Shown here piece after piece: positions 1 through 61,435 of a stretch of DNA of 64,000 nt. The notes beneath the pieces were generated by a model, which was not told the origin of the DNA, did no database searches, and saw nothing but the letters and a program-made list of their open reading frames with translations. Within the stretch, counting starts at the first letter, position 1; each line of letters begins with the position of its first letter. The stretch is from assembly GCA_964270895.1 (NCBI GenBank), contig OZ185450.1. One strand, given 5' to 3'. Position numbers and translations under genes: made by a program. Source of the DNA: Podarcis filfolensis (lineage: Eukaryota).

Positions 1-213
1 AACCTTCCAGCTCTGGGATTCACACCAGGTGAGAGTTTGCTCTCTGGAGAGAATCCGTTGGAAGGTGTGCATAGCCTGACTTTGGGATGCTCATTTGAGG
101 GCGAGGAGCAGTTGGAGAAAGAGCGAAAGGCACCCTCAAGAAGCAGGGGTGTGTTGGGGAGGCTCAGCTGTTTGCACACACAGCAGGGCCGGAACGGAGA
201 GCACATCACATAC

Positions 214-252
214 CTGCCCAACTGCGTACAAGCAGTCTGCGGGGCTCAGGAC
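214..252 (-). CDS. HMBS: HMBS exon 11 ([13 protein letters not shown])
   Basis: 39 bp, ccag|...cag|gtatgt. Confidence 0.93.
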
Positions 253-3200
253 CTGGAGGGAAGCAGAACGAGGGTTGGTGATGCTTCAGAACAAGGCAGA
301 GCAAAATATTTATTTATTTTAAATTTGTATACAGCCCTATACATCTCAGAGCGTTTCACAAATTCATTCAGTTTATATATCCCGAAGGAATGCAGACATC
401 AGTGAGCATCTCAAGAACTGAGGACACATGGAGGAGAAGCTCCCTGGGCACAATGGGGGGGGGGGGGGACAACATTCATCCCAATCTCTTCTGCCCCACT
501 TACTTGACCAATGCGGCTGTCCCAGCCCATCCGCCTGAGGCCAGCCGCTGCCAGGACAATGGCACTGAAATCCTCCTTCTCATCCAGCTTCTTCAAGCGA
601 GTGTTCAAATTTCCCCTCTACAAGAAGGATTAAGGGAAAACCACAGAGATCCCTGGTTGGGTGGCCCATGGCCTGCACTTCCAGAGCTGGCCACCAGGGA
701 GGGTGTTCTAACACCACAGTCCCTCTCTGCAGGGGAGAAGGCGGCTCAAGACCTTAGCTCCTCTGCCAGGCCTCCAGGCTGCATCTCAGCACAATGCCAG
801 GCTAGGCCCCGATTCAAAGCCAAGCCAGGGATGTGGGGCCTTGAAAAAGTTCATATTCAATATAACAGAAGCTGCATATTCAAAGGAATGGCCACATTCT
901 CCACTAGGAAATTCAACCTCCACAAGGTGTCCTTTTCGCACGTGGTGGCAAGATTTGAGTGCATGGCGAGACGGGGGAGGGGTACAGAGAGGGGGCATCA
1001 CTGTTTGGTTTTTCAAGGGCCAGTCTAAGTCAAGGGGTCATTTTCAAAGGATACAATATCCCTGAATTCCAGGTGAGGGAACTTTCTCTTCAGCTGAGCT
1101 GCCCGGCGAAGTGAGCTGGTCCCGATCACGCTGCCAGAGAGCCAAAAGGAAAATGGCGTCAAAGAAGAGTCTGGACTGGTCAGCCTCACCCGTCTGAGCA
1201 GAGTTAGGAACAGTCCCCCAGACACCTCGGCACAAACACTGTCTACACGGGACCGTGTGCAGCAAAGTGTCAACTCTGGGCAAGAGCGGCTGGCCAAGAC
1301 CTCAGGCAGGGAGGGACCCCTTTCAGCACTGCTACCCAAGAGGGGTTGAAGCTGGGACAAAATGTTAATTTCAGCCCTTCCTGCACACCAGATGGAACCC
1401 AAGGAAGGAACAAGTGGAACTCACCTCTTCTCAGGGAGGCTGTGGAGGCTCTTGCCTGCATGCTTAGGGTGGAAGACGACAGCATCATACGGACTCTCTC
1501 TCCTGCAAGGGACAGATGGGGTTGCCTTTTAGGGAGCAGGTCAGCTGGGCTGTAGCAGCAGCAGTAGCAGCAGCTGCCTCCAAGTTTCTTGCAAAGAGAC
1601 AGCTGGAGGCTCCATGACCTGGACTTTTGTCTGTTCACAGCAAAGGCCACCACTTGGCCTAAGGCAGCGGCCAGTTTAGATGGGTTAAAGAAGTCGTTAC
1701 CCATCTGATGCTCTGGAAGTTAGGTAGTTTGGTGGGCACGCCCACTTCCGCAGGGACCAACAGCTGACATGTGTTAAGGACACCAGCCAGGAATACCAGA
1801 GCAAAACAGCAGCCAGTAGGCTTGGTCTTTATTGAAGAATGTCGCAACAGGACTCCCACCTGCCACAAGGTGGAACAAGATGGAAGCCCTGAACAAAAGA
1901 GCCCCCAAACTTTTATTAGCTGCTAATTCCCATGTTACACCCACCCAAACTACATCACTAATGCATCATGAAAGGGGAGGTCTGATGGCAGTAATCTGAG
2001 CATCCTGGTCCCTGCCCCACGGTTCTCCTTGCCCTCCACCAAAGACCCATCCAGTGTAACAAAAAGATATTTACATTTCCCTGTTTCCCAGCCAAATTAA
2101 TCACACCCTTTTGTCTTCATCTGGGTTTGTTATTTCTGGAATGGCTACCTGTCTGGCACTCAGGTATCAGGATGCGAGGAATTATCACTCAGGCAGACGG
2201 GCTGCTGAGTAGCTGAGCTCACATGTCTACATGCATTTCTGAAGTTTTCCCAGTGAGCCAGTACATAGATACATTTATCAGTGAATTGTTACATTTGGTA
2301 TCATGCAGCAAAGGCCCTTTGAATAGATAGGAAGAAACTGTGATGAAGTGTTTTGTGGGGACAAAATCACAAAAGTGATTGTGCTGATTTTGGTAGTGGG
2401 CTGCATGTGCATGATATCTGCTGGAGGAGCACCCCCCCCCAACCTATACATAAATTCCTGCAACACATAGAAAAGGGAAGGCGGATGCCTGGCCAGGGCA
2501 AACTTTGATGGACCAAGAGCCAGAGCGCTGAGTCAGGCAGAAGGAAGCAGAGGAGCCCAAACTCACTTGCAAATTGCACCGATGGTGAAGCCAAGTGGGA
2601 GGGATGTGGGCAGGTCCTTCAGGGAGTGAACCACCAAGTCAACCCTGGAAGGGAAGAAATGAGCTGGTCAAGGGTTTGCCAACCTTATGGGCCCAGGATG
2701 GGCAGAGAGAGCAATTATGAAGCGTAAGACCTCAGCGCAGATCCCTGCTTGGCTATGAAGCTTTGCTGAGTGGGCCTGGGCATGTCAGCCTCAATGTGGC
2801 CTACTGCTCAGGATTGCTGTGACACAGTTTTAAACATCAGGCCCTGATGCTTCAGGAAAGAGCAGGAAAAACACCAATTTTTTTACAGGAAGCACCAGAG
2901 CTCGCTCTCCCCAGTTATGCGCCAGGACTGGGCTCCCCCTCCCCACAATTGCTGGACTCCCAACCTGCAACGCTGGGTTAGAGGAAACGCTTTCACTCAA
3001 GAGAAGACTTCCTGGCTCTGGAAGAATCCATGCCTACCAGGACGTGGACTCCTGCTCAGAGCTAAAGCACCAGCGCCAAGGGCACCACCAGGCATTGCCT
3101 GCCAAGGAGAGCTTTCTCCCGCACCTCCCAGCCAAAGAGAACTTACTCATTTCTTTCCAGTGCATTTTCCAGTTCCTTCGTAAATAGGCTTTTCTCACCA

Positions 3201-3888
3201 ATCTAAATGGGAAAAGAGCATGTTACAACTTGGGCTGCTTTTTCTATCCACCGCTGGTTGCGTCATGAGCCCAGGGAGCATACGGCTGCTTACCTTGGAC
3301 AGAGCTGTGTCCAGGATCTTGTCACCTGTGGTTGACATGGCAACTATTCAGAGAGAGAGGAAGGAAAGAAGGAAGAGGGAAGATCAGGAAGGATGACAAG
3401 CACCAGTAGGACATGAGCTACAAGAAGGATGAGCAATGTGTGGACTTCCTAGATGCTCACTGCTTTAGTAGGGTAGGATACAAACTGGCGCCAGGAAAAA
3501 ACACCCCTCTTATCCCAGGCCTTTGGCTACTTAAATAATCTATGGCCTTTTAAACTGTGTGGGTGGGGGATATTGTTTATGTTTGCTACTATTTAACGTG
3601 TGGCATAACTGATAATGTGTTGGGAGTAGGACCTGGGAGACCAGGGTTCGAATTCCCACTCAGCCATGAAGCTCACTGGGTATCTCTTAGTCTAACCTAC
3701 CTCACAGGGCTGTTGAGAGGATGAAATGGGGAGGATAACTATGTACAATGCCTTGAGCTCATTGGAAGGGAAAAAAGGCATATAAATGTATTAAATAAAT
3801 AAATAAATGTTATGTATTTTGGGGTTTTACAAGGTAAGCCACTCTGTGAGTCTTGAAGGAATGGTCATATAGAAATTAATTAATTAAT

Positions 3889-3931
<43 letters not shown>

Positions 3932-6900
3932 AAAGCTAGGTGCCACACAAGCCCATCCTCGCCATGCACCAGGTCAGAAAAGCTCAGCACTCTGTCTGTG
4001 CACCTGAGGCTGCTCTCACCCAGCACCTGGATGGAGCTCCTGTGTTGGCTTGCTTTCTCCCCATCCACTACTTGGTCAATACCCAATTCCCAGGCTTCCT
4101 GCCTCACACACTCACCAATCTCAAAGCAGAGGTGAGGGTGGCGCTCCTGCAGCATCTGAACCACGCTGTCCGTTTGGATCCGGGCGAGCTGCAATTTCAG
4201 AGAGAAGGAAGGCAAAGTCAATCAGTGTGCCCTACCTATGACCCAAGAGGCGCAGGCGGCAAGTGTGCCCAACGCACCTGCTGTCAGAGGAAGACATGTG
4301 CGCAGATTCTTGCTCCGATATGCTGTTCCCACAAAAGCCCAGAAGACATGAGACTTCAAGTCCCACTTCCTATGCACTTCACTCTCATCGGTTTTGGGTC
4401 CGGTTCATGTCTGTGATCTGCTCTGCCCCCCTCCCCCCAGCTTTGGGGGCCCACAGCGAAAAAGCCAGACATGAAGAGAGCCAACCTGGCTTGAGCCAGT
4501 CAGAGAATGAAAAGGAAGCAAAGGCAGCAGCGCAGCTGATGTGTGCTCAGCAAACATCCCAGAATGAAGCTCTGCAGAAATACCATTCACTGAAGCCAAG
4601 TGTTGCAGGATTCCAGACAGGCAAAGGGAAGGACTTCTTCACACAGAGCGTAATTAAATTGCAGGGTTTGCTCCCACAAGACATAGAGATGGTCATCAAT
4701 TTCAGGGGACATAAAAAGGGATGAAAGGCTATCAATGGAATATTAGCTACAATGGCTGCGTTCTGCATCCAGCATTGGAGGCTGTGTGCATTTGAATATC
4801 AGTTGCTGAGAATTGCAATAGTGAAAATATTGCTGCTGGACTCAGGTCCTTCTCGTGGGCTCCAAGAGTGGCTGGGGAAACTCAGCCATATGGGCAGGGA
4901 AGGAATGAAGGAATGATGATGATGATGATGATTATGTGGTTGGCCACTGTGAGAACCAGATGCTGGACTAGACGGGTCTTGGACGTGACCCGGCTGCAGG
5001 GCAATTCTTATGTTCTGAGAGAAGGAGTGGAGACCCACTTCTGGCGCCCAGGACAGAGCTTCTAGGGAAAAGGAGATGCCGCCCTGAGGTGCCGCCCCAT
5101 CCTAGGCCCCTGTTCCAAACAGGCTTTCTGGGTTTATTCCTGAACTGCCACCAGCCTCAACAACAGGAGGCAGATGGGAGATTAGCTCTCCACCGCAAGG
5201 GTGGAGCATTATCTTTCTTTACAAGTCTGCCCCTCCCAGTCTTGGCTCTTGGGCGTACTTCTTTGCTCCTGCTAGGGCGGCTCATGGGGAAATCCTTGCA
5301 TCCTCCTGGCAAAAGAAAGGTCAGGGGAATTGATGGTTGCTCAACACCACCAAAGCAATTCAGCTGGAGAAGTATGGATTAATTGCCAGGTGGATACAAA
5401 TGAAAACTTTTAAGATCGTTAAGATCAATGAGCAGCAGCGAAGTAGCACAGCTGACAAACACTTAAGGCAGTATAATGCAAATGACGTAACAGCCTTACA
5501 AACGAAACCCTGTGGCTGCTAGCAAATTACAGCAATAGTAGCAAAGGGACAAAGTATTGAGGAGCAGCACAGAGTGAAATATAATTCAGAAAGATGCACA
5601 TTTGGGAATACAGCTCCTGTGATACTTAGCCCAATATGAACTTGGAATTTGCTATTACTGAATAGTTCCCAGAATAGGTGAGTTCCTGCACAGCAGCCAT
5701 TAAGAGCTGTGGCAGCAGTGGGGGACTCTAAGTCTAAGCTCTGCTTGATACAGAAAACCCAGCAACATCTCTAAGAAAGGACTGTCCAGCCTCTGCCCCC
5801 AGTGAGGCAATACAGGAAACTGCATTATCCCAAGACAAACCATTGCTCCCTCTAGCTCAGTTCGGTCAGCACTGACAGGCAGCCATTCTTCCAGGGTTTC
5901 AGGCAGGGAGTCTTCTTTCACAGCCCTACCTGGAGATGCCGGGGATTGAACCACAAGGGCTCCACCACTGAGATCTGTCCCTTCCCAAGGGAGAGTCCAC
6001 CATGGTTTCGGTGTCAGGACTGCTCTCGCCTTTAAGAAGTCTCTCCAAATGCTCATCTGAGTTCTCCCCTCCTGGGATATAAGCCCCTAGGATCTAGTCC
6101 TATCCTCTGGCACAACAGAGGATAGTTCTTCGTCCTTTTCTTAAGGCATTTTTATATATTGCTATTATCCACCCCTATAACTCAGGCCTTTAAGAATACA
6201 CTTCGTTCTATGACTTGCTCTCTTCAGCACCAGCCGTCTTTCCCTGCCTTCCTCTGTTCCAACCTGGTTACTAGGAAAGCAACAGAAAATGCCCTGTTGT
6301 CCCAGTGCAAATCCATTCACTGGTCAATGCACAGTCCTGTTTGTACGAACACTTTGCAAGAAGCAGACCCAGGAAAAGCAGCAGGCAAGCAAGAGAACGG
6401 TAATGACAAGAACCTCACCTGGCTTTTCCTTGTTCCCACGCGGATAGTCTCTTTCTTCAAGCCATTCTTCTCCTGTGAAGAAATGTCTCCAATTACTCCA
6501 AAGAGGGAGGGTTATTATGGTGGCATTTCCACAATCTCCCCGCAAAACCCTACATCAAGAGGAAGCTTGCACCAGCCAAGCCTTTCCTTGCAAAGGGGCT
6601 GCCAAGCAGGGTGGGACAGTTAAGCCATGGAAGTGGACACAGAAGGCATCCCAGGAAGCCCCACACTGGAACTTACCTGGGCAGACACCTTCTGCAATGT
6701 TCGCTACATTAAAAGGAACAGCCCTAAAGGATAGCTGAGCAATGTGCAATTAGATACCCATCCCTCTTGCCTGCCTCCCTTGTGTCAGATCTAAAATTCT
6801 ACGCTTCTCTGGGCAGGGGCCCGCCTTTCCCTTTGTTGTGCTGTAAAGCACCATAACATCATTGGCACAACCACAAACAACTATTACTAATGTCGTTTTT

Positions 6901-9583
6901 ATTGCCTGACCTGACCAGCCCTAGCCCAGCAACCCTTGACAGGCTTCAGGGCAAAGAACACATGTGTCAAAGACCTGAAAGAAGCGGAGGTTATTCAGTA
7001 GCACAACTGGCCCCAAGGGGCAGTCATCTGCTTCCCAAGAGTCCCCCAAAGACCAGGCTGTGCAACGCAGGTAAGCAGCACATGGAACGAGCAAGGGCCC
7101 TGCAGGTAAAGGTGCCTGCAGAGCCATACAGGGCACAGGACAAGATAGCACTGAGACAAACATTATCAGTTAAGGGCCTATCGAGTCCTAATTGCAGATA
7201 GAAGTATTCCTCAGTAGGGTCTGTCTCTTGCGGTAAAGTTTCATCCCTAAATATGTCATAACACACACAGCTGAAAAGAGAGATTGTGTATGTATGAGTG
7301 TGGGTAAGAGAGGCAGGGAGAGAAGTATGAAGTCCTGGACAATAACCCAGGGCCAGAAAATCTTCAGACCTGTCAAAATGGCTCTTAAGATTTGGAAATA
7401 TTTCCCCAGACCTGCAAAGAGACCTGGAGAGACATACGCCTCTTACCTGACTGTCCTGCGGCACCACCTTTGCCATCTCAACAGAGGTTTGCAACCCAGG
7501 ACCCAGTGAAGAGAAGAAAGATGTCTTTGCTAGAGGGGAGAGGAAGACCTGCTGCCCTGCTCTGTCAGCGTCTAATCAAGGGAGTCTCTCCTTGCAAACT
7601 AGCCCCAACCTGGCAGCAGAGATAAGGCAGAGAAGGGGAAAGGGCGTTCAAGGGGGGTGGGGAGAAGGAAGGAACTGAGCCTGGAGGGAACTGCAGCTGC
7701 AGGGGCTGCTTTCAAGGAACTGTCCGGGTTTTGCACAGAAAGAAATTGTTCTGGGAAAGACAGGCAGCAGAAGACAATCTCCCAGAGCAAAGCAATTGAC
7801 AAAGGGGCCATTTGCACAAGTGAACAAGGGACATTTCAACCACTTATTTGCAATATAGGGCAGGGGGAGGGTGGCGGCGCAGATGGGGAGATACAATCAA
7901 ACTGCATGGCAAACAACTATAATCTCAATGGATCAGAATGCAGGAAGCGATCATCCTGAGAACCTCCTTGCTTCCACCCATGGTGGCCAGGGCTATCTGT
8001 GCCATCCACAAAGTTCTGCAGCAAGGAAGTGCACAAGCTGGGCTGATATTTGCTTTCTAGGACATCTCCCAAGAGAATGCGGCTCTTCTTAGGGTGGTGG
8101 CTGTGGAAAGGAGTACATAAAGACAAGAAATGGGATGCAGCGAGATAGGGCAAAACACAGGAAAGGGGCACAGGTGGGCAGTAGAGCTAAAAATGGGCAG
8201 TAGATATCAATAGTTCATAGGAGAGATTGGTAGTCACAAGGTACTGAAGCCCCATGTGTGACTTCTGGAAGTCAACCCCAAATCATCAGTTCCCTTCAGT
8301 CTTCATCAAACATAGCCATGAGCACTAGCTGCTTAGCTTTAGGGAAGAAAAAGAGAGATACCATCAGGGTGCTGAAAGCAGCAGTTTCTGTGTTTGTAGG
8401 GCAATTATGCAGCCAAGGGGAACAGAAAGAGGTGCTTAGTGTGAAGAGAGAAGAGAATTTGTTTGAATCTGGGACTGAAAACACAGAAATAGGCAAGCTG
8501 TGTAGGTGTCCACCATACAGTATCACCCAAAAGGCTCAGGCCCAACAGCCCAAAATCCAGGCAAAGTCTCAGGTTTGGAAGCTAATATAACAGTCTCCCC
8601 ATGGGAAGGCTATGGGATGTATTCCCAGCAGAACTTTGAAAGGGTAAGTGAAAGTGTGATTGTGCACGCAGAAACTAGAAAAACAGCTTGATGAAGCACC
8701 CTATAGCAGAGGGGAATGCAAGAGGGCACCTGAAAGCAGCAAACCCACACTTCTCTTCGCCGCCACCGCACTCTGGCTCACCTTGGCTGCCAGTAGAATG
8801 TGCCTGGAGGTATCTGTACAGTGTACTACCTAACAGGGCAAAGGTGTGTCCTACCAAGCCACCCTTCGGATTAGGCAAGAGTGCCTTGCCACACAGAGGC
8901 AGAGCTCAAGTTGCACAACGTTGTGCAAGAAACAAGAGGCATCTGATTTTGGCAGGAGCACATTCTAGAAATGCAACCTGCCTCCCTTGACCGGCAAAGG
9001 GCAAAATAGCCCTGGGAGAAACACCAGCCTCTCCCAATGTTTCTCTGCAGATATAAAGCGGATTACAGGGATACTAACATGAAACACTTTGGGCACTCGA
9101 ATGAGGCCAATGCCCTGTTGTTGTTCTTGCTACTGCTGTTATCATAAACAAAATTGTGTGTGTGTGTGTATATAAATCGAGTTTCATAAAAATCAAACTA
9201 GCACTACCATTTAACAACTATATTCCCCCTTCCTAAGGAAAGTAGCACTGGAGGACACACAGGTGTAGGAAAAGAGAGATACCACCCAAGTAAGTCGGGG
9301 GGTGGGGAGGAGTAGCAGATAGGCAGCCATGGTCGGAGACAACCCCCGTCCCCAAGCCCATCAGCGGGGGCTGAACTCATTTGCATCTCATTAAAGACCC
9401 CCGCCACGCACGTGAGGTCACCACCATGCACAGAGGTCACCTCGCGACGTCCTCCGCCATTGGCTGAGCCCCGGGAAGCCCCGCCCCTCCGACCCCTCTC
9501 TCCCTCCCCCTCCCCAAAGCGAGCGAAGAGCCGGTCAAGGCAGCGGCGGAGAGGCTCACCAAGGCGGGCGGCGAGCTGGTCAT
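214..9583 (-). CDS. HMBS: Hydroxymethylbilane synthase (porphobilinogen deaminase), 5'-part; downstream exons lie before the window start
   Basis: Exons (human numbering, minus): e1 9560-9583, e3 6419-6472, e4 4116-4188, e5 3294-3343, e6 3147-3202, e7 2567-2644, e8 1425-1502, e9 1055-1130, e10 504-617, e11 214-252. The 642 nt join in frame and encode [39 protein letters not shown] and RGNLNTRL. Confidence 0.97.
504..617 (-). CDS. HMBS: HMBS exon 10 ([13 protein letters not shown]...RIGQ)
   Basis: 114 bp, tgtag|...caa|gtaagt. Confidence 0.96.
618..1054 (-). other. U12-type (minor spliceosome) GT-AG intron of HMBS
   Basis: 5' splice site GTATCCTTT (1054-1046); branch-point-like TTCCCTTAAT (638-629) about 12 nt upstream of the AG. 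Confidence 0.85.
1055..1130 (-). CDS. HMBS: HMBS exon 9 ([25 protein letters not shown])
   Basis: 76 bp, cag|...att|gtatcc. Confidence 0.96.
1425..1502 (-). CDS. HMBS: HMBS exon 8 ([25 protein letters not shown])
   Basis: 78 bp, gcag|...ag|gtgagt. Confidence 0.95.
1772..2465 (-). mobile_element. Solo-LTR-like element in HMBS intron 7
   Basis: TGTT...AACA termini; flanks catg/cata (imperfect 4-bp TSD); minus-strand AATAAAAG (1917-1910) followed by AATAAA (1833-1828). Confidence 0.55.
2567..2644 (-). CDS. HMBS: HMBS exon 7 ([26 protein letters not shown])
   Basis: 78 bp, ccag|...aa|gtgagt. Confidence 0.96.
3147..3202 (-). CDS. HMBS: HMBS exon 6 ([18 protein letters not shown])
   Basis: 56 bp, ttag|...ga|gtaagt. 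Confidence 0.96.
3294..3343 (-). CDS. HMBS: HMBS exon 5 ([16 protein letters not shown])
   Basis: 50 bp, atag|...aag|gtaagc. Confidence 0.96.
3615..3810 (+). mobile_element. tRNA-derived squamate SINE (Squam3-like, L2-type tail)
   Basis: B-box GGTTCGAATTCC; body ctcagccatgaagctcactggg...acctacctcacagggctgttgagagg; ends in (taaa)n. Confidence 0.65.
3890..3930. repeat. (AAT)n microsatellite
   Basis: About 13 uninterrupted units; produces the poly-Tyr tail of ORF 3889..4221. Confidence 0.95.
4116..4188 (-). CDS. HMBS: HMBS exon 4 ([24 protein letters not shown])
   Basis: 73 bp, gcag|...g|gtgagt. Confidence 0.96.
4560..5020 (+). mobile_element. Degraded CR1 LINE 3' end
   Basis: Translates to [29 protein letters not shown] (CR1 ORF2 C-terminus-like); ttcttatgttct tail. 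Confidence 0.65.
5805..5972 (-). mobile_element. tRNA-derived SINE, same family as 48381-48573
   Basis: Reverse complement contains ggttcaatccccggcatctccaggtagggctg...cctgaaaccctggaagaatggctgcctgtcagtg. Confidence 0.65.
6419..6472 (-). CDS. HMBS: HMBS exon 3 ([18 protein letters not shown])
   Basis: 54 bp, acag|...cag|gtgagg; contains no Met codon. Confidence 0.95.
7447..7476 (-). CDS. HMBS: Candidate alternative (erythroid?) HMBS first coding exon, [10 protein letters not shown]
   Basis: gagATGG Kozak context, 10 codons, phase-0 donor CAG|GTAAGA, in frame with exon 3; AGATAA at 7620-7625 and CACCC box at 7652-7662 upstream. Confidence 0.45.
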
Positions 9584-9960
9584 GCCGCTGGTGGCGCCGA
9601 GCAGCGAAGGGGGCCGGCAGGCAGGCGGGGCGAGGGCTGGAGGGGGTCCCGCTCTGGGTCAACTAGGCGCTGCCGGTTCCATCGCCACTCCGCGGAGCCA
9701 CGCATGCGCCTCCCCGTCCCGGACGTCACTTCCGGCTTCCTGTTCCTCCCACAGGCGGCTTTCCATGAATGGGAGGTGGCTCCCGATGCCCTTTATACCG
9801 TAATTACCGTCGACGCGGCGCACGCCCTTTTCGGAAACGTGAAGCTGGGGGCGCCGCTGGATTGCCTCGCGTTCCGGTCCTTGCAGTGAGGCGCTGTGGA
9901 CGCAGCACGTGGCTCCGGCCGAATATTTTACGGGCAGTGGAGCGTCTTCTGCCCGAATAC
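9250..9960 (-). promoter_or_regulatory. HMBS housekeeping CpG-island promoter
   Basis: CpG-rich; CGCATGCGC (NRF1-like, 9701-9709), GACGTCA and CACTTCCGG (CRE-like/ETS, 9722-9735), CACGTG at 9409 and 9906. Confidence 0.8.
9560..9583 (-). CDS. HMBS: HMBS exon 1 coding part (MTSSPPAL)
   Basis: ATG in the CpG island, phase-0 donor ttg|gtgagc. Confidence 0.85.
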
Positions 9961-12006
9961 ACCAGTTAGGCGTTTGAAAGGGGCTGGCCTATAGTATTAT
10001 GCAAACTACCTGCAAATCGCCTTCAAAAGTGTCACGAGATTTATTCTAAAATTGAGGAAACGTTGCTTGAAAGGCCTGGGAGAGCCGCTACCAGCCAGCC
10101 AATGAGGCAGAAGGGCCAATGGTCTGGTTGGTGTAAAGCTGCTTCCTGTGTAAAACTCTGCTACAAGATGAGCTGACAACGAACGCTACCTTAAACGGAG
10201 AGGTCTCTCAGGCTTCTCATCCTGTAATATGGAGTCCCCAGGGGCACAAGAAGTAGATCACTGCATACTGAAAATGGGACCCACTGACTGGTGTTCATCC
10301 CTGATGGTGCAGCAAATGAGTTTATTGGAGGTGGCCTAATTAGCAAGTGCAGCTGGCAGGATAGTAGACGAGTGTGGTGCTCGACTGAATCCAGCAAGGA
10401 AATTTGCATGTGTTTTATTAAAAGGGGATTGGACCAACTGATGGAAGTGAAGAGGTTTAACGATGCATATTAGGAACCCCAGCTCCCAAAGAGCATAACT
10501 ATAAATAGTGTAAGAGCAGCTCTACTGTTGTAGCCCACACACCACCTAGTTCTGTATGCCAGTAACAGCCCAACCAAGTGAGAGCAACCAACCCCTTCAC
10601 CCCTTTTACCAAACTTTTCTCTAAACCAGTCATTCCATCCATCATTTTGGGTGCCCTTTTCTAACAATGTAATATTTTTTCCATAGATTGGTGTTGCAGC
10701 ATTATGATATCAACAGTTTTCTTTTCAGTTTCTTTCCCAATGATTCCTAGCATGGAAGTTGTCCTTTTTCACAGCTGCCACGTGCTACGTCAACACCTTC
10801 ATTGAGCTATCCACTGCCACCCACAAGGTCTCATTCCTGGCAGCTCACCATCAGATTCACAGACCACGAGGTATATGTAAAATTAAGGTATTTTGCCCCA
10901 ACATACATCAATTCATGGTTTAGAGTGAACTGCATTTTCCTCATTATCTCCAGAGAGAGAAAAGAGCAGGCAGCTGTGGGAGGAAGCTCAAACCTGCATC
11001 TAGCCTCAAAGACTATTCCTCCCTCTGTGGTAGAAGATGGTGCCCCAAGAAAGATGAAGGAGCAGGAAGGTAGCTCCCTGTGGCTTGGAGCACAGTTCCA
11101 ATGCTTAATTGCTCTTGCAAAGTCAAGAAACAAGGAGGTGAAGTGCCGGGGTGGTAGGAAGCTAATTGCAGCAGAGGAGATGGGAGGAACCAGCTCAGAT
11201 AACAGCCATCTGCCTGCAGGCCCAGCTTCTACTACCACCCACAAACTATACCAGAAATCTAATCCTGAGCAAGAATAGCCACAGAACTGGGCCTTTTCTA
11301 TGAAGCAGCTCCTCTTGGCTCTCACAGAAATACCAAAGAATTGGGAAGGTGGGAGGGGGAGAGAGGCAGTTGTTCAGAAAGGAAGAAAAGAGTATACATA
11401 CATATACAGGAAGACCCATAGTTCTCTTCACCCACATTCACACACTTTATAGCTCAAGCAAGTAAACCGCTATTAAGTGAAGGGTTACAGAGATATTAGT
11501 GCTGAACATTATTTACATCTTCAATCCATCTCCCCAGGAAAATAACTCTTCCAGTTCCAGAATCCAGTCAGTTTAGTTCCACGCTGTATATCTTTGATGA
11601 GGGCAGCACAGGCTTACTAGAGATCCTCCTCATACAGAGCTTGGAACACAAGAGGCACCAGGAGAAAGTTGGAGCAGAGAGCTCGTTTTCACCACACAGT
11701 CTTACAGGAGCCCACTGCTAATGCTGAAGCACCAGACTTTTAACCAGGAGACTTAACCAGCAGGCTGTAAGGCTTGGAGAAGCAGGCCTGGCTGTAGTCA
11801 GGCAAAATAATAATAATAACAATAATAAACAAGCCAGAGTTCCCTTGGTCTCTCTCTCCATTTCCTAAGCCAGTTACGCAGCCCTCCTGGTCTTCAGTCA
11901 AATCCTAGCCTCTTTTGGGTCACAGTGCACTAGAAAGAGAAGCTGATTGCATCACTCGTTCGGAGAGCCAAGGTCAGGGGACTGAAGGACACCCACCCAC
12001 CGCCAT

Positions 12007-59473: not shown

Positions 59474-61435
59474 CAACTCCCTGGGGAGAGACGATTATTA
59501 GATTAAGCGGTATAAACATTTTATTTTTTTATAAACCACTTGTGATTTTTATATAATGAAGTATACATAATAGTTATTAAACATTTGTCTTTTACCACTT
59601 CTACACAAAGAGTAGCACTTCTAGGAACATCCTCACTGAATGTTGCTGCAGAACTTTACTTGCTCAAGTGGGGACTGCTGTCCATACTAACTAAAGGTCA
59701 AGAAATGCAGATATTATAAAAGAAGCAATACCTGTTAGAGTCTGAAAACAGTGTAGCTTGAAAGTGTCGGTCTCTAGCATCTCAATTCCAGAACTCCCCT
59801 GCTCGGGAGACAGTTGGGACCCAATTGCAAACAACCTGCACATAAAACAGAGCCCCAAATTGTACCAATTGATAAAGTGCCTTGCCTATATCAAAACCAA
59901 TCAACCCCTCTCCCTTTTCTGGGTTCTGGCAAACATCTCAGCCACCCCTGACTCACGAGTGGAACATGGAGGCCAGCATGAGCTTCTCATTGGATGACAG
60001 TCTGGGGCGACCAAAGCGGATTGACACTGGGTAGTTGGCTGGGTTGCCCAGGAACTCCAGCACATCCCTGCCGTCACCAGTGTACCTTCCGTTGACATCA
60101 ATGCCATTGATGGCAAGCACAGCATGGCCCACTGCAAAGAAGGGAAGAGGCAGTCATCACTCAATACCCCCTTCTCACCCGGCACTGGCAAGCCTTCCTG
60201 CATCAGTAACCCCCCTGTTTCCCTCACCCTTGGGAGCTCTGCCAATCAGTGGAGTAAAGGAGCAAGAACAGCTCCAGTATACAATGTACACAGTGTCATT
60301 TCCTGGAGCAGAATTTGCCAGTGACATAACCTGAGATGGGTGGTGGATGTTAGGTCTGACCAGGTTCAGCTTGGGATCCCTGTCTTAGGCAGGCAAAGCT
60401 TAGCCAGTGAACATCTCTGAGCCACCCTGAGATCTTTGGATTTAAGGTGGTGTGCTAAATAAGTAAACAAGCAAATAGATAAAACCTTTGGGAGGTGGTC
60501 AAAACGTTTTACCATGAATGTCACACCTGAGGCTAAAAACCCTCATAAACGGAAGCATAAATGTATTGACAATAAATTATCAATGACCATCAAAACCAGC
60601 TGCTGGAGGCAGCCACCATACCCTGCCTAATGGTAAGGGGGTCGCAAAGAGTTGCTGGTGGGACCCAGTTGTTTCCCCTCCCCACCGCAAAAAAGCCCAA
60701 TTCCCTGATCCTTTGTGAGCCACCCTTTGCCAGAGGAGCCTAATAAAGTGGACATGGTTCAGGTGTGCGCTGCCACCGAAGCTTTTTCAGCTCAAGGGGC
60801 AGCTGTCATGGGTTCTGTCTCCCCTTCAATGTCCAAAGGCAGCGGAGGCACCAGAAAATATTAAAAATAAAATAATAATAACAATTTATTATTTATACCC
60901 CGCCCATCTGGCTGGGTTTCCCCAGCCACTCTGGGCGGCTTCCAACAAAGCACTAAAATACAATAACCTATTAGACATTCAAAGCTTCCCTAAACAGGGT
61001 TGCCCTCAGATGTCTTCTAAAAGTTTGGTAGTTATTTTTCTCTTTGACATCTGGTGGGAGGGCGTTCCACAGGGCGGGTGCCACTACCGAGAAATAGAAA
61101 ATTCGCGGGTAGGTGGGGGGAAGGCAGAGTGGGGAAAGTATACTTATGCGGGGCGGGGGGATACAGCGCGTGTTAACGAAATGGGGGGGGGGGCTCCGCC
61201 TGTGTCGAAAGGGCCCAGCCCCCGGGGCCGCTCCTTTGCCGGCTGCTTCCCGCCCCTCACCGCGGATGCCGTCGCGCTGCCCGAAGGAGACGAGGACATG
61301 CTCGTCGTGCGGGCGCAGCACCAGCTCGAGGGGGAAGCTGAAGGTCTTCTCGGTCTCGGCCCTCGGCGCGTAGTGGTCCAGCTGGTAGATGAGCCCTCCG
61401 GCCTTGTTCACCACATACACACTGAAGATGGCCAT
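57908..61435 (-). CDS. TRAPPC4: Trafficking protein particle complex subunit 4 (synbindin/TRS23), 219 aa
   Basis: Exons (minus): 61261-61435, 59957-60131, 59732-59835, 58657-58783, 57908-57986, total 660 nt. [33 protein letters not shown] and [27 protein letters not shown] motifs. Confidence 0.97.
58657..58783 (-). CDS. TRAPPC4: TRAPPC4 exon 4
   Basis: 127 bp, [20 protein letters not shown]. Confidence 0.96.
59440..59473. repeat. (AAT)n microsatellite within L2-tail debris
   Basis: About 11 units. Confidence 0.9.
59732..59835 (-). CDS. TRAPPC4: TRAPPC4 exon 3
   Basis: 104 bp, [34 protein letters not shown]. Confidence 0.96.
59957..60131 (-). CDS. TRAPPC4: TRAPPC4 exon 2
   Basis: 175 bp, [14 protein letters not shown]...LASMFH. 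Confidence 0.96.
60872..61095 (-). mobile_element. 5'-truncated L2 LINE 3' end in TRAPPC4 intron 1
   Basis: [38 protein letters not shown] followed by an L2-type 3'UTR and (aataa)n tail. Confidence 0.85.
61261..61435 (-). CDS. TRAPPC4: TRAPPC4 exon 1
   Basis: 175 bp, donor cg|gtgagg. Confidence 0.96.

What the first reader, a model, noticed from the sequence alone, without database searches (positions are those of the whole stretch)
7447..7662. Candidate erythroid first exon of HMBS that supplies its own start codon
Known: mammals make erythroid HMBS from a GATA1/KLF1/NF-E2 promoter in intron 1, with a non-coding exon 2 and initiation at a Met in exon 3. Seen: here exon 3 ([18 protein letters not shown]) has no Met, and the next in-frame Met lies past the conserved GTRKS motif, so the mammalian route is unavailable. 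Intron 1 instead carries gagATGG-CAAAGGTGGTGCCGCAGGACAGTCAG|GTAAGA (7476-7447). That is a strong Kozak start, 10 codons ([10 protein letters not shown]) and a strong phase-0 donor in frame with exon 3. Upstream lie AGATAAG (7620-7626), CTG-N7-AGATAA (TAL1/GATA-like spacing) and CCCCACCCCCC (7662-7652, KLF1-type). Inference: a reptile erythroid isoform with a distinct N-terminus, a different solution from mammals. An acceptor at 7531/7530 means it could instead be an 83-nt cassette that shifts the exon 1 frame.
Basis: partly seen in the sequence, partly recalled or inferred. Interest (0 to 1): 0.75.

Follow-up and report, generated by a model that had tools for sequence, protein, structure and literature searches.

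The report
Second HMBS promoter and start exon
This lizard's haem-synthesis gene HMBS has a real second first exon inside intron 1 that carries its own start codon, but related lizards already have it annotated and zebrafish has the same layout, so it is confirmed and not new.

Summary
On the minus strand, ATG 7476 opens ten codons ([10 protein letters not shown]). They end at 7447 before a strong GT donor, in phase with exon 3 (6472-6419), which has no Met.

RNA confirms the splice. The 7447|6472 junction appears in contigs of two related species and in raw stranded RNA-seq (7 reads, against 41 for exon 1|exon 3). No exon 1 to 7530 junction was seen, so the cassette reading fails.

The exon is old. 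The order housekeeping exon 1, then this exon, then exon 3 holds in seven squamate sequences (the window plus six species) and a turtle. Four things are invariant across them: the antisense GATA core CTTATCT (7626-7620), ATGG, the phase and CAG|GTAA. The peptide itself drifts.

RefSeq already lists the isoform. Podarcis muralis, Lacerta agilis and Zootoca vivipara each have an isoform X1 starting MAKV(V/L)LQDSQ. Zebrafish hmbsb was published with two first exons, each with its own start codon.

So this is not a reptile invention. Mammals, with a non-coding exon 2 and a Met in exon 3, look like the derived state. Erythroid specificity rests on position and on the GATA/CACCC promoter. It was not shown, because the tissues of the runs are hidden.

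Interest is modest.

The parts
9560..9583 (-). Housekeeping first coding exon of HMBS. It encodes MTSSPPAL, ends in phase 0 before donor GT at 9559-9558, and lies in a CpG island.
   Evidence: Sequence read. GC is 0.66 in 9501-10000. CpG observed/expected is 0.97. The exon 1|exon 3 junction has 41 raw reads in X41. It matches the MTSSPPAS N-terminus of the lacertid 358-aa isoforms.
7652..7662 (-). CACCC-type box (CCCCACCCCCC), 35 nt upstream of the GATA core.
   Evidence: It is identical in Podarcis and Zootoca. Varanus has CCCCCACC and Pogona a C-rich run. Anolis and Eublepharis have none. It is therefore only partly conserved.
7620..7626 (+). GATA motif AGATAAG. It reads CTTATCT on the gene's strand and is followed by N7-CAG, a half E-box/GATA composite.
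   Evidence: CTTATCT is invariant in all 8 rows of alignment A3, which holds 7 squamate sequences and a turtle. The CAG half-site is kept in 6 of 8 rows.
7584..7619 (-). Conserved core just downstream of the GATA motif (CTGCTGCCAGGTTGGGGCTAGTTTGCAAGGAGAGAC). It probably holds the transcription start.
   Evidence: Invariant columns CCA 7613-7611 and TGGG 7607-7604. Contig depth drops from 20 to about 6 in X1 and from 75 to about 6 in X10 between 7600 and about 7640. Raw reads in X41 fall to zero above 7691. The exact start was not mapped.
7477..7600 (-). 5' untranslated part of the alternative first exon. Its upstream end is approximate.
   Evidence: X1 and X10 contigs reach 7600 and X41 raw reads cover it. 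It holds no ATG. There is no ATG between the GATA motif and the start codon in any of the 7 squamate sequences. A CT-rich tract at 7510-7514 carries 6-nt insertions in relatives.
7447..7476 (-). Coding part of the alternative first exon: ATG plus 9 codons ([10 protein letters not shown]), ending in phase 0.
   Evidence: ATGG at 7476-7473 is invariant. The lacertid RefSeq isoform X1 starts MAKV(V/L)LQDSQEKNG.
7441..7446 (-). Splice donor GTAAGA of the alternative exon.
   Evidence: The 7447|6472 junction appears in X1, X2 and X41, with intron ends CT..AC on the + strand, which is GT..AG on the - strand. CAG|GTAA is invariant in 8 rows.
6419..6472 (-). First common exon (exon 3 in mammalian numbering). 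It encodes [18 protein letters not shown] and has no Met.
   Evidence: It aligns to human HMBS residues 12-29, with Lys opposite Met18. Both first exons splice to it, and it splices to 4188.
4116..4188 (-). Next common exon ([24 protein letters not shown]).
   Evidence: The 6419|4188 junction appears in all four runs.

Best explanation
This is the lizard copy of the second, tissue-regulated promoter and first exon that vertebrate HMBS genes carry inside intron 1.

Transcription starts in a CpG-poor promoter, a few tens of bases downstream of an invariant antisense GATA motif (7620-7626) that has a CACCC box 35 nt further up. The exon runs to 7447 and splices directly to the first common exon at 6472, skipping the housekeeping exon 1. 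The common exon has no Met here, so the alternative exon provides the AUG at 7476. The enzyme made differs from the housekeeping form only in its first residues: [10 protein letters not shown] replaces MTSSPPAL, ahead of the conserved GTRKS motif.

What is shown: the exon, the splice, the strand, the reading frame, and conservation of the GATA motif, ATG, phase and donor across squamates and a turtle.

What is inferred: that AUG 7476 is the start actually used, that GATA1-type factors drive the promoter, and that it is used mainly in red-cell precursors. The peptide itself probably has no special function. Selection keeps the start codon and the frame, not the residues.
For: RNA evidence:
- The 7447|6472 junction appears in X1 (organism A, contig depth 20).
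- In X2 (organism B) it is the only assembled 5' end, in one contig with exons 3 and 4 at depth about 120.
- In raw stranded RNA-seq X41 it has 7 reads from 5 starts, against 41 reads from 30 starts for exon 1|exon 3.
- All reads lie in the sense of the gene.

Sequence evidence in the window:
- It is the only phase-0 ATG-to-donor unit in intron 1.
- No ATG lies upstream of the start codon within the exon.

Comparative evidence:
- The order housekeeping exon, alternative exon, exon 3 holds in 7 other sauropsid loci.
- CTTATCT, ATGG and CAG|GTAA are invariant.
- No ATG lies between the GATA motif and the start codon in any of the 7 squamate sequences.
- CpG observed/expected is 0.09-0.23 at this promoter against 0.68-1.06 at the housekeeping one.
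- Paired N-termini are annotated in Podarcis, Lacerta, Zootoca, Pogona, Varanus, Eublepharis, Sphaerodactylus, Anolis and snakes.

Links to known systems:
- Mouse intron 1 has CACCC boxes 30 and 47 nt upstream of an antisense CCTTATCA, about 310 nt before exon 3. This is the same order and spacing as here.
- In human, the erythroid mRNA is exons 2-15 with its start in exon 3 (PMC7464722).
- GATA1 and CACC motifs are reported for the Pbgd promoter (PMC3463598).
- Zebrafish hmbsb P2 has its own start codon, a ten-residue difference, and is induced together with gata1a and alas2 under hypoxia (PMC4432979).
Against: - The tissues of the runs are coded, so erythroid preference was not tested. In the one raw run the alternative junction is the minority form (about 15%).
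- The transcription start is only bracketed, at roughly 7590-7640. That places the GATA motif much closer to the start than the -70 I recall for the human promoter.
- The X2 contig runs colinear up to 8183. If that is a real transcript, it carries eight upstream ATGs.
- X10 (organism D) shows the intron between this exon and exon 3 retained, and no junction.
- The CACCC box is absent in Anolis and the gecko.
- Lizard-to-mouse sequence similarity is not above shuffled controls, so orthology with the mammalian erythroid promoter rests on position and motif order only.
- Use of AUG 7476 was not observed at the protein level.
Confidence: 0.7

Rival explanations
1. The alternative promoter and coding first exon are real, but they are not erythroid-specific. 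On this reading it is a stress- or hypoxia-inducible, or broadly used, second promoter that happens to contain a GATA motif.
For: Zebrafish hmbsb P2 was described as hypoxia- and cold-inducible, not as erythroid-specific (PMC4432979). The junction is present in RNA runs of unknown tissue, including one where exon 1 dominates. GATA motifs are bound by non-erythroid GATA factors too. The CACCC box is not conserved in Anolis or the gecko.
Against: It occupies the same position in intron 1 as the mammalian erythroid promoter, with the same CACCC-then-antisense-GATA order and about 30-35 nt spacing. In zebrafish, induction came together with gata1a, alas2 and other erythroid genes (PMC4432979). In one run (X2) it is the only assembled 5' end at high depth, which points to strong tissue dependence.
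Confidence: 0.24
2. It is an 83-nt cassette exon (acceptor at 7531/7530, donor at 7447) included between exon 1 and exon 3. That would shift the frame and give a non-productive transcript.
For: An AG lies at 7532-7531, preceded by a pyrimidine-rich tract.
Against: No junction from 9560 to 7530 appears in any of four runs, while 41 exon 1|exon 3 reads and 7 reads of 7447|6472 were found in X41. Coverage runs continuously upstream of 7530 to at least 7600 in X1, X2 and X10. RefSeq models for lacertids give only the two N-termini. The invariant ATG and phase would have no reason to be kept in a frame-shifting cassette.
Confidence: 0.02
3. It is a chance match of motifs plus transcriptional noise or intronic pre-mRNA reads, with no function.
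For: Single GATA and CACCC motifs are common (117 and 107 sites in the window). Background intronic coverage exists in X1 at about 6x.
Against: The junction is exact and canonical in three runs of two species. The GATA motif, ATG, phase and donor are invariant in squamates and a turtle while the surrounding sequence diverges. Gene models with this N-terminus exist in many species.
Confidence: 0.02

Closest known systems
RefSeq 'porphobilinogen deaminase isoform X1' of lacertid lizards (Podarcis muralis XP_028563799.1, Lacerta agilis XP_033027731.1, Zootoca vivipara XP_034994817.1; also Podarcis lilfordi CAI5795453.1)
   Same: It has the same exon in the same place. P. lilfordi DNA is 95% identical over 3.7 kb. 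The N-terminus MAKV(V/L)[23 protein letters not shown] differs by one or two residues. Each is paired with a 358-aa MTSSPPAS isoform from exon 1.
   Different: The window's species has Pro at residue 6 ([10 protein letters not shown]) and Leu at the end of exon 1 (MTSSPPAL). The database entries are automatic gene models. They say nothing about promoter, tissue or meaning.
Zebrafish hmbsb alternative promoters P1 and P2 (Long et al. 2015, BMC Genomics 16:385, PMC4432979)
   Same: Two alternative first exons are spliced to a common next exon, and each carries its own start codon. The proteins differ in the first ten residues. 5'RACE confirmed it.
   Different: P2 was described as induced by hypoxia and cold, not as erythroid. 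I did not inspect the fish promoter sequence. Orthology of the fish and lizard exons is inferred only from the shared ~10-residue length and the ME/MA start.
Mammalian erythroid HMBS (PBGD) promoter and exon 2 (Chretien 1988 and Mignotte 1989, as cited in PMC7464722 and PMC3463598)
   Same: A second promoter lies in intron 1, upstream of the first common exon. It skips exon 1 and carries CACCC and antisense GATA motifs about 30-35 nt apart. This was checked in mouse.
   Different: In mammals exon 2 is non-coding (there is no ATG in the mouse exon 2 region). Translation starts at a Met in exon 3, which is Lys here. The mammalian erythroid enzyme is therefore shorter, not different, at its N-terminus. 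Lizard-mouse sequence similarity is not above chance.

Membership tests
HMBS / porphobilinogen deaminase gene | Encodes the conserved N-terminal GTRKSQLARIQT motif and the Porphobil_deam domains | tested here: met
   The spliced N-terminus aligns to human HMBS chains at E about 1e-9. Orthologues retrieved with the window's exons carry PF01379 and PF03900. Relatives show VPS11 upstream and an H2A histone gene downstream.
Vertebrate HMBS alternative intron-1 promoter / first exon | Lies in intron 1, between the housekeeping exon 1 and the first common exon | tested here: met
   It sits 2107 nt after the exon 1 ATG and 974 nt before exon 3. The same order holds in 7 other sauropsid loci.
Vertebrate HMBS alternative intron-1 promoter / first exon | Splices directly to the first common exon, and exon 1 is not included | tested here: met
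   The 7447|6472 junction appears in X1, X2 and X41. No exon 1 junction into this exon was found.
Vertebrate HMBS alternative intron-1 promoter / first exon | Acts as a transcription start, not as an internal exon | tested here: inconclusive
   Depth steps down between 7600 and about 7640 in X1 and X10. Raw reads stop below 7691 in X41. However, the X2 contig runs on to 8183, and no cap-based data were available.
Erythroid promoters of haem-pathway genes (GATA1/KLF1 type) | GATA and CACCC motifs in the proximal promoter | tested here: met
   AGATAAG lies at 7620-7626 and CCCCACCCCCC at 7652-7662. The GATA core is invariant in 8 rows. The CACCC box is only partly conserved. Factor binding cannot be tested with these tools.
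Erythroid promoters of haem-pathway genes (GATA1/KLF1 type) | Preferential use in erythroid cells | not testable with these tools
   Run tissues are coded. Usage does differ strongly between runs: it is the sole 5' end in X2 and about 15% of junctions in X41. The cell type behind that difference is unknown.
Mammalian-type erythroid HMBS transcript | Non-coding exon 2 with initiation at a Met in exon 3 | tested here: not met
   Exon 3 has no Met, and Lys aligns with human Met18. The alternative exon carries the ATG. It works like the mammalian unit as a promoter switch but is not of the mammalian coding type.
Own-start-codon type (as in zebrafish hmbsb P1/P2) | Each alternative first exon has its own start codon, and the isoforms differ only in about ten N-terminal residues | tested here: met
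   MTSSPPAL is replaced by [10 protein letters not shown] ahead of the same exon 3. The layout is as described in PMC4432979.

The most novel reading that the evidence does not exclude
The alternative first exon with its own AUG, about ten codons long and driven by an antisense GATA core in intron 1, may be the ancestral erythroid HMBS unit of bony vertebrates. On this reading mammals are the exception: they lost the exon-2 AUG and gained a Met in exon 3, so their red-cell enzyme became N-terminally truncated. The gene models are consistent with this. Ten-residue alternative N-termini occur from gar, sturgeon and teleosts through newt, turtle and tuatara to squamates. Among the 120 best hits, only the two mammals have the exon-3 Met. 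The genomic position in fish and amphibians was not checked, and neither was erythroid use outside mammals.
Probability: 0.5. Interest if true: 0.45.

Novelty: new member of a known kind. Interest (0 to 1): 0.3.

Why it matters
For annotation, this confirms that the window's HMBS gene has two promoters and two protein N-termini. It also fixes their coordinates.

For biology, it gives a compact and deeply conserved promoter: an invariant GATA core, a conserved block downstream of it, and a CpG-poor context. Nucleated lizard red cells would be an easy system for studying erythroid regulation on it.

For evolution, it suggests that the textbook mammalian arrangement (non-coding exon 2, shorter erythroid enzyme) is a lineage-specific change. 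Selection has kept the start codon and frame of the alternative exon for several hundred million years while its residues drifted. None of this overturns current understanding. The isoform is already in public gene models, and the layout is published for zebrafish.

Tried and rejected
**Cassette-exon reading.** Rejected, because no 9560|7530 junction was found.

**Repeat or TE origin.** blastn of 7400-7750 against the whole window found no second copy, and the repeat finder found nothing there. However, 7566-7634 also matches pieces of other contigs at about 92% in three runs. A second genomic copy of the promoter core may therefore exist. This is unresolved, and it would not refute function.

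**The 150-codon reading frame.** The frame stays open from ATG 7476 into the intron (ORF 7024-7494). I treat it as a chance ORF. A word search with the 183-residue stop-free stretch gave no hit at E<=10. That search could not see proteins longer than 320 residues.

**Fragment alignments.** MAFFT misplaced the exon fragments aligned to a full-length bird protein in A2, and partly in A1. A1 was still usable as a search query.

**The big representative search.** I used it once, with a 38-residue exon. The only purpose was to get a full-length vertebrate HMBS id after the word search had left the question of relatives open.

**Failed look-ups.** Four look-ups of shorter isoforms failed because only the longest product of a gene is on record. 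I solved this through the cluster members.

**Lizard-to-mouse similarity.** Local alignment scores were not above shuffled controls. MAFFT did line up the mouse CCAGGCTGGGCT with the squamate CCAGGTTGGGGCT, and the end of mouse exon 2 with the lizard ATGGCAAAGGT. I do not rely on either.

**Papers not held.** The Mignotte 1989 and Chretien 1988 papers are not in the library. The -70/-100 positions in the human promoter are from my memory only.

**Scan notes and operator rules.** A findings search by words found nothing. The look-up by place returned only this same finding. The window has no N.
Full report
**1. What is in the sequence**

HMBS lies on the minus strand and runs off the low end of the window.

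- The housekeeping first exon is ATG 9583 to 9560 (MTSSPPAL). Its donor GT is at 9559-9558, in phase 0. It sits in a CpG island with GC 0.66.
- The first common exon, exon 3 in mammalian numbering, is 6472-6419. It encodes [18 protein letters not shown] and has no Met.
- When the spliced N-terminus is aligned to solved human HMBS chains, human Met18, the erythroid initiator, falls opposite a Lys.
- The candidate is exactly as described. The ATG is at 7476-7474 in the context GAGATGG. Ten codons ([10 protein letters not shown]) end at 7447, and the donor is CAG|GTAAGA.
- Scored with a simple 9-mer matrix of my own, the donor is the second strongest of 167 GT sites in intron 1. The unit is the only ATG-to-donor combination in phase 0 in the whole intron.
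- No ATG lies between 7810 and 7477, and an in-frame stop lies 102 nt upstream of the ATG.
- AGATAAG (7620-7626, + strand), CTG-N7-AGATAA (from 7610) and CCCCACCCCCC (7662-7652) are all present.
- A composite half-E-box/GATA site within 80 bp of a CACCC box occurs once in 64 kb, here, against 0.03 expected from shuffles. I chose this test after seeing the site.

**2. RNA evidence**

No run is on record as RNA for the source organism. Small runs of close relatives hold HMBS exon words at the share expected for spliced RNA. I laid four runs on 4100-9750.

- The junction 7447|6472 has GT..AG ends on the minus strand. It appears in a contig of X1 (organism A, depth 20).
- It also appears in a contig of X2 (organism B, depth about 120). 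That contig continues through exon 3, exon 4 and further exons, and shows no other 5' end.
- In raw stranded RNA-seq X41 (organism B) it has 7 reads from 5 starts. The same run has 41 reads from 30 starts for exon 1|exon 3.
- All X41 reads over HMBS, including those on the alternative exon, have the first mate on the + strand. This fits an RNA on the minus strand.

The start site can only be bracketed.

- In X1 the exon contig (depth 20) gives way to genomic-path contigs at about 6x. In X10 the step is from 75x to about 6x. Both steps fall between 7600 and about 7640.
- In X41 the depth is zero above 7691.

Three oddities remain.

- The X2 contig runs colinear up to 8183. This may be a low-depth pre-mRNA tail joined to the contig.
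- X10 (organism D) has the intron between this exon and exon 3 retained, and shows no junction.
- The stretch 7566-7634 is also matched at about 92% by pieces of other contigs in three runs.

**3. Relatives**

A word search with the stop-free stretch around the exon found nothing. I therefore used the representative search once, with a 38-residue exon, to get a full-length vertebrate HMBS (P0008, Apus apus). I then used that protein plus the window's exons as a profile.

The result is clear.

- Lacertid RefSeq models come in pairs. A 360-aa isoform starts MAKV(V/L)[23 protein letters not shown] (Podarcis muralis XP_028563799.1, Lacerta agilis XP_033027731.1, Zootoca vivipara XP_034994817.1, P. 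lilfordi CAI5795453.1). A 358-aa isoform starts MTSSPPAS.
- The same pairing occurs across squamates:
  - Pogona: MMAQVVFQQSQ / MTSGPPAG
  - Varanus: MANVVLLHNQ / MSGPAAPAAAEEP
  - Eublepharis: MADVVLWPTQ / MSAAPPA
  - Sphaerodactylus: MADVLLGPSQ / MSAPPAA
  - Anolis: MAKQGQ / MASGEAP
  - snakes: MAAEN or MAAES / MSGPPPP...
- Ten-residue alternative N-termini also appear in a turtle (MENKTRRNNQ), tuatara (...MENETLRSSQ), a newt (MEEQPLRNGQ), gar (MENGVPKSTR against MSREPGAQ), sturgeons (MENGLGKYIE) and teleosts (MEEGPYKYIR).
- Among the 120 best hits, only the two mammals (Cavia, Mus) have the KMRVIRVG Met in exon 3.

**4. Genomic comparison**

I fetched the loci of seven sauropsids: Podarcis lilfordi, Zootoca, Pogona, Varanus, Eublepharis, Anolis and the turtle Emydura.

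- P. lilfordi is 95% identical to the window over 3.7 kb, so the window comes from a lacertid.
- In every locus the order is housekeeping exon, alternative exon, exon 3.
- In an alignment of about 390 nt (about 300 nt for Anolis) upstream of and through the exon (A3), the following columns are invariant in all eight rows:
  - CTTATCT (window 7626-7620, the GATA motif)
  - CCA (7613-7611)
  - TGGG (7607-7604)
  - ATGG (7476-7473)
  - CAG|GTAA (7449-7443)
- The coding residues and much of the rest diverge.
- In all seven squamate sequences there is no ATG between the GATA motif and the start codon.
- The alternative promoter is CpG-poor (observed/expected 0.09-0.23). The housekeeping promoter is a CpG island (0.68-1.06).
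- The CACCC box is kept in lacertids, recognisable in Varanus and Pogona, and absent in Anolis and the gecko.
- The half E-box at N7 is kept in six of eight rows.

What selection has held is therefore a GATA-centred core, a first AUG, the phase and the donor. That is what one expects of a promoter-switch exon whose only coding job is to supply a start.

**5. Relation to mammals and fish**

- In human, the erythroid mRNA is exons 2-15 with the start codon in exon 3, giving a protein 17 residues shorter (PMC7464722). GATA1 and CACC motifs are reported for the Pbgd promoter (PMC3463598).
- In the mouse locus, intron 1 has CACCC boxes at L008 3613 and 3630 and an antisense CCTTATCA at 3661, about 310 nt before exon 3. 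No ATG lies in the exon 2 region.
- The order and spacing match the window. CACCC lies 30 and 47 nt upstream of the antisense GATA in mouse, and 35 nt upstream here.
- Local lizard-mouse alignment scores are not above shuffled controls. Orthology therefore rests on position and motif order only.
- In zebrafish, Long et al. 2015 (PMC4432979) showed by RNA-seq and 5'RACE that hmbsb has two promoters. Their alternative first exons each hold the start codon and give peptides differing in the first ten residues. P2 was induced by hypoxia and cold, together with erythroid genes.
- The lizard unit is therefore of the fish type in its coding layout. It resembles the mammalian erythroid unit in its position and promoter motifs.

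**6. Verdict**

The core of the interpretation, an alternative first exon that supplies its own start codon, is supported by RNA and by deep conservation.

It is not a reptile novelty. It is already in RefSeq models of sister species, and the layout is published for zebrafish. The gene models suggest it is ancestral and that mammals changed.

Erythroid specificity remains an inference. It rests on position, on the motifs and on the strong run-to-run differences in usage. The tissues of the runs are hidden.

I put the probability that this is a real, translated alternative first exon at about 0.95. I put the probability that it is used mainly in erythroid cells at about 0.65-0.7. Interest is modest (0.3). 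The evolutionary reading is the only part that might be new.

Noticed in passing
window 7566-7634: This 69-nt stretch is the most conserved part of the promoter, including the GATA motif. In three RNA runs it is also matched at about 92% by pieces in the middle of other contigs (up to 2269 nt) whose flanks do not lie on the stretch. This suggests a second transcribed locus with a copy of the core. No second copy exists in the window.
   Followed up: partly
window 6419-7600 (run X10, organism D): One contig (1752 nt, depth 75) is spliced from exon 4 to exon 3 but stays colinear with the genome from exon 3 through the 974-nt intron up to 7600. That run shows no 7447|6472 junction. The cause could be intron retention or a changed donor in that species.
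   Followed up: no
window 7447-8183 (run X2, organism B): The contig that carries the alternative junction stays colinear with the genome up to 8183, well beyond the estimated start. If that is a real transcript, it would contain eight upstream ATGs.
   Followed up: partly
window 9290-9330: A second GATA (CTATCT) plus CCCCACCCCCC pair lies about 260 nt downstream of the exon 1 ATG. It shares a 13-nt identical run with the CACCC box at 7652-7662. It is kept in Podarcis lilfordi but not in Zootoca, Pogona, Eublepharis or Anolis.
   Followed up: partly
window 7024-7494 (minus strand): The reading frame of ATG 7476 stays open for 150 codons into the intron. The sequence looks random in composition, and a word search found no relatives. 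I take it for a chance ORF, but it is what an intron-retaining transcript would encode.
   Followed up: yes
window 4856-5044 and 5801-5989: Two stretches inside the intron between exons 3 and 4 collect very high summed contig depth in all RNA runs (up to about 2900), with many loose ends. They behave as dispersed repeats that are expressed elsewhere. 4862-4906 has an inverted partner at 60891-60935.
   Followed up: no
window 7510-7514: The CT-rich tract in the 5' untranslated part carries 6-nt insertions in relatives: GAGGAG in organisms A and B, and AGAAAG in D. It is an indel hotspot upstream of the start codon.
   Followed up: no
L007 (Emydura macquarii), whole locus: The longest RefSeq product of the turtle gene (698 aa) is a VPS11-HMBS read-through fusion model. 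It joins VPS11 N-terminal domains to HMBS exon 3.
   Followed up: no
L004 (Varanus komodoensis) 4361-4464: In Varanus the intron between the alternative exon and exon 3 is only 73 nt. In the other squamates it is 809-1589 nt.
   Followed up: no
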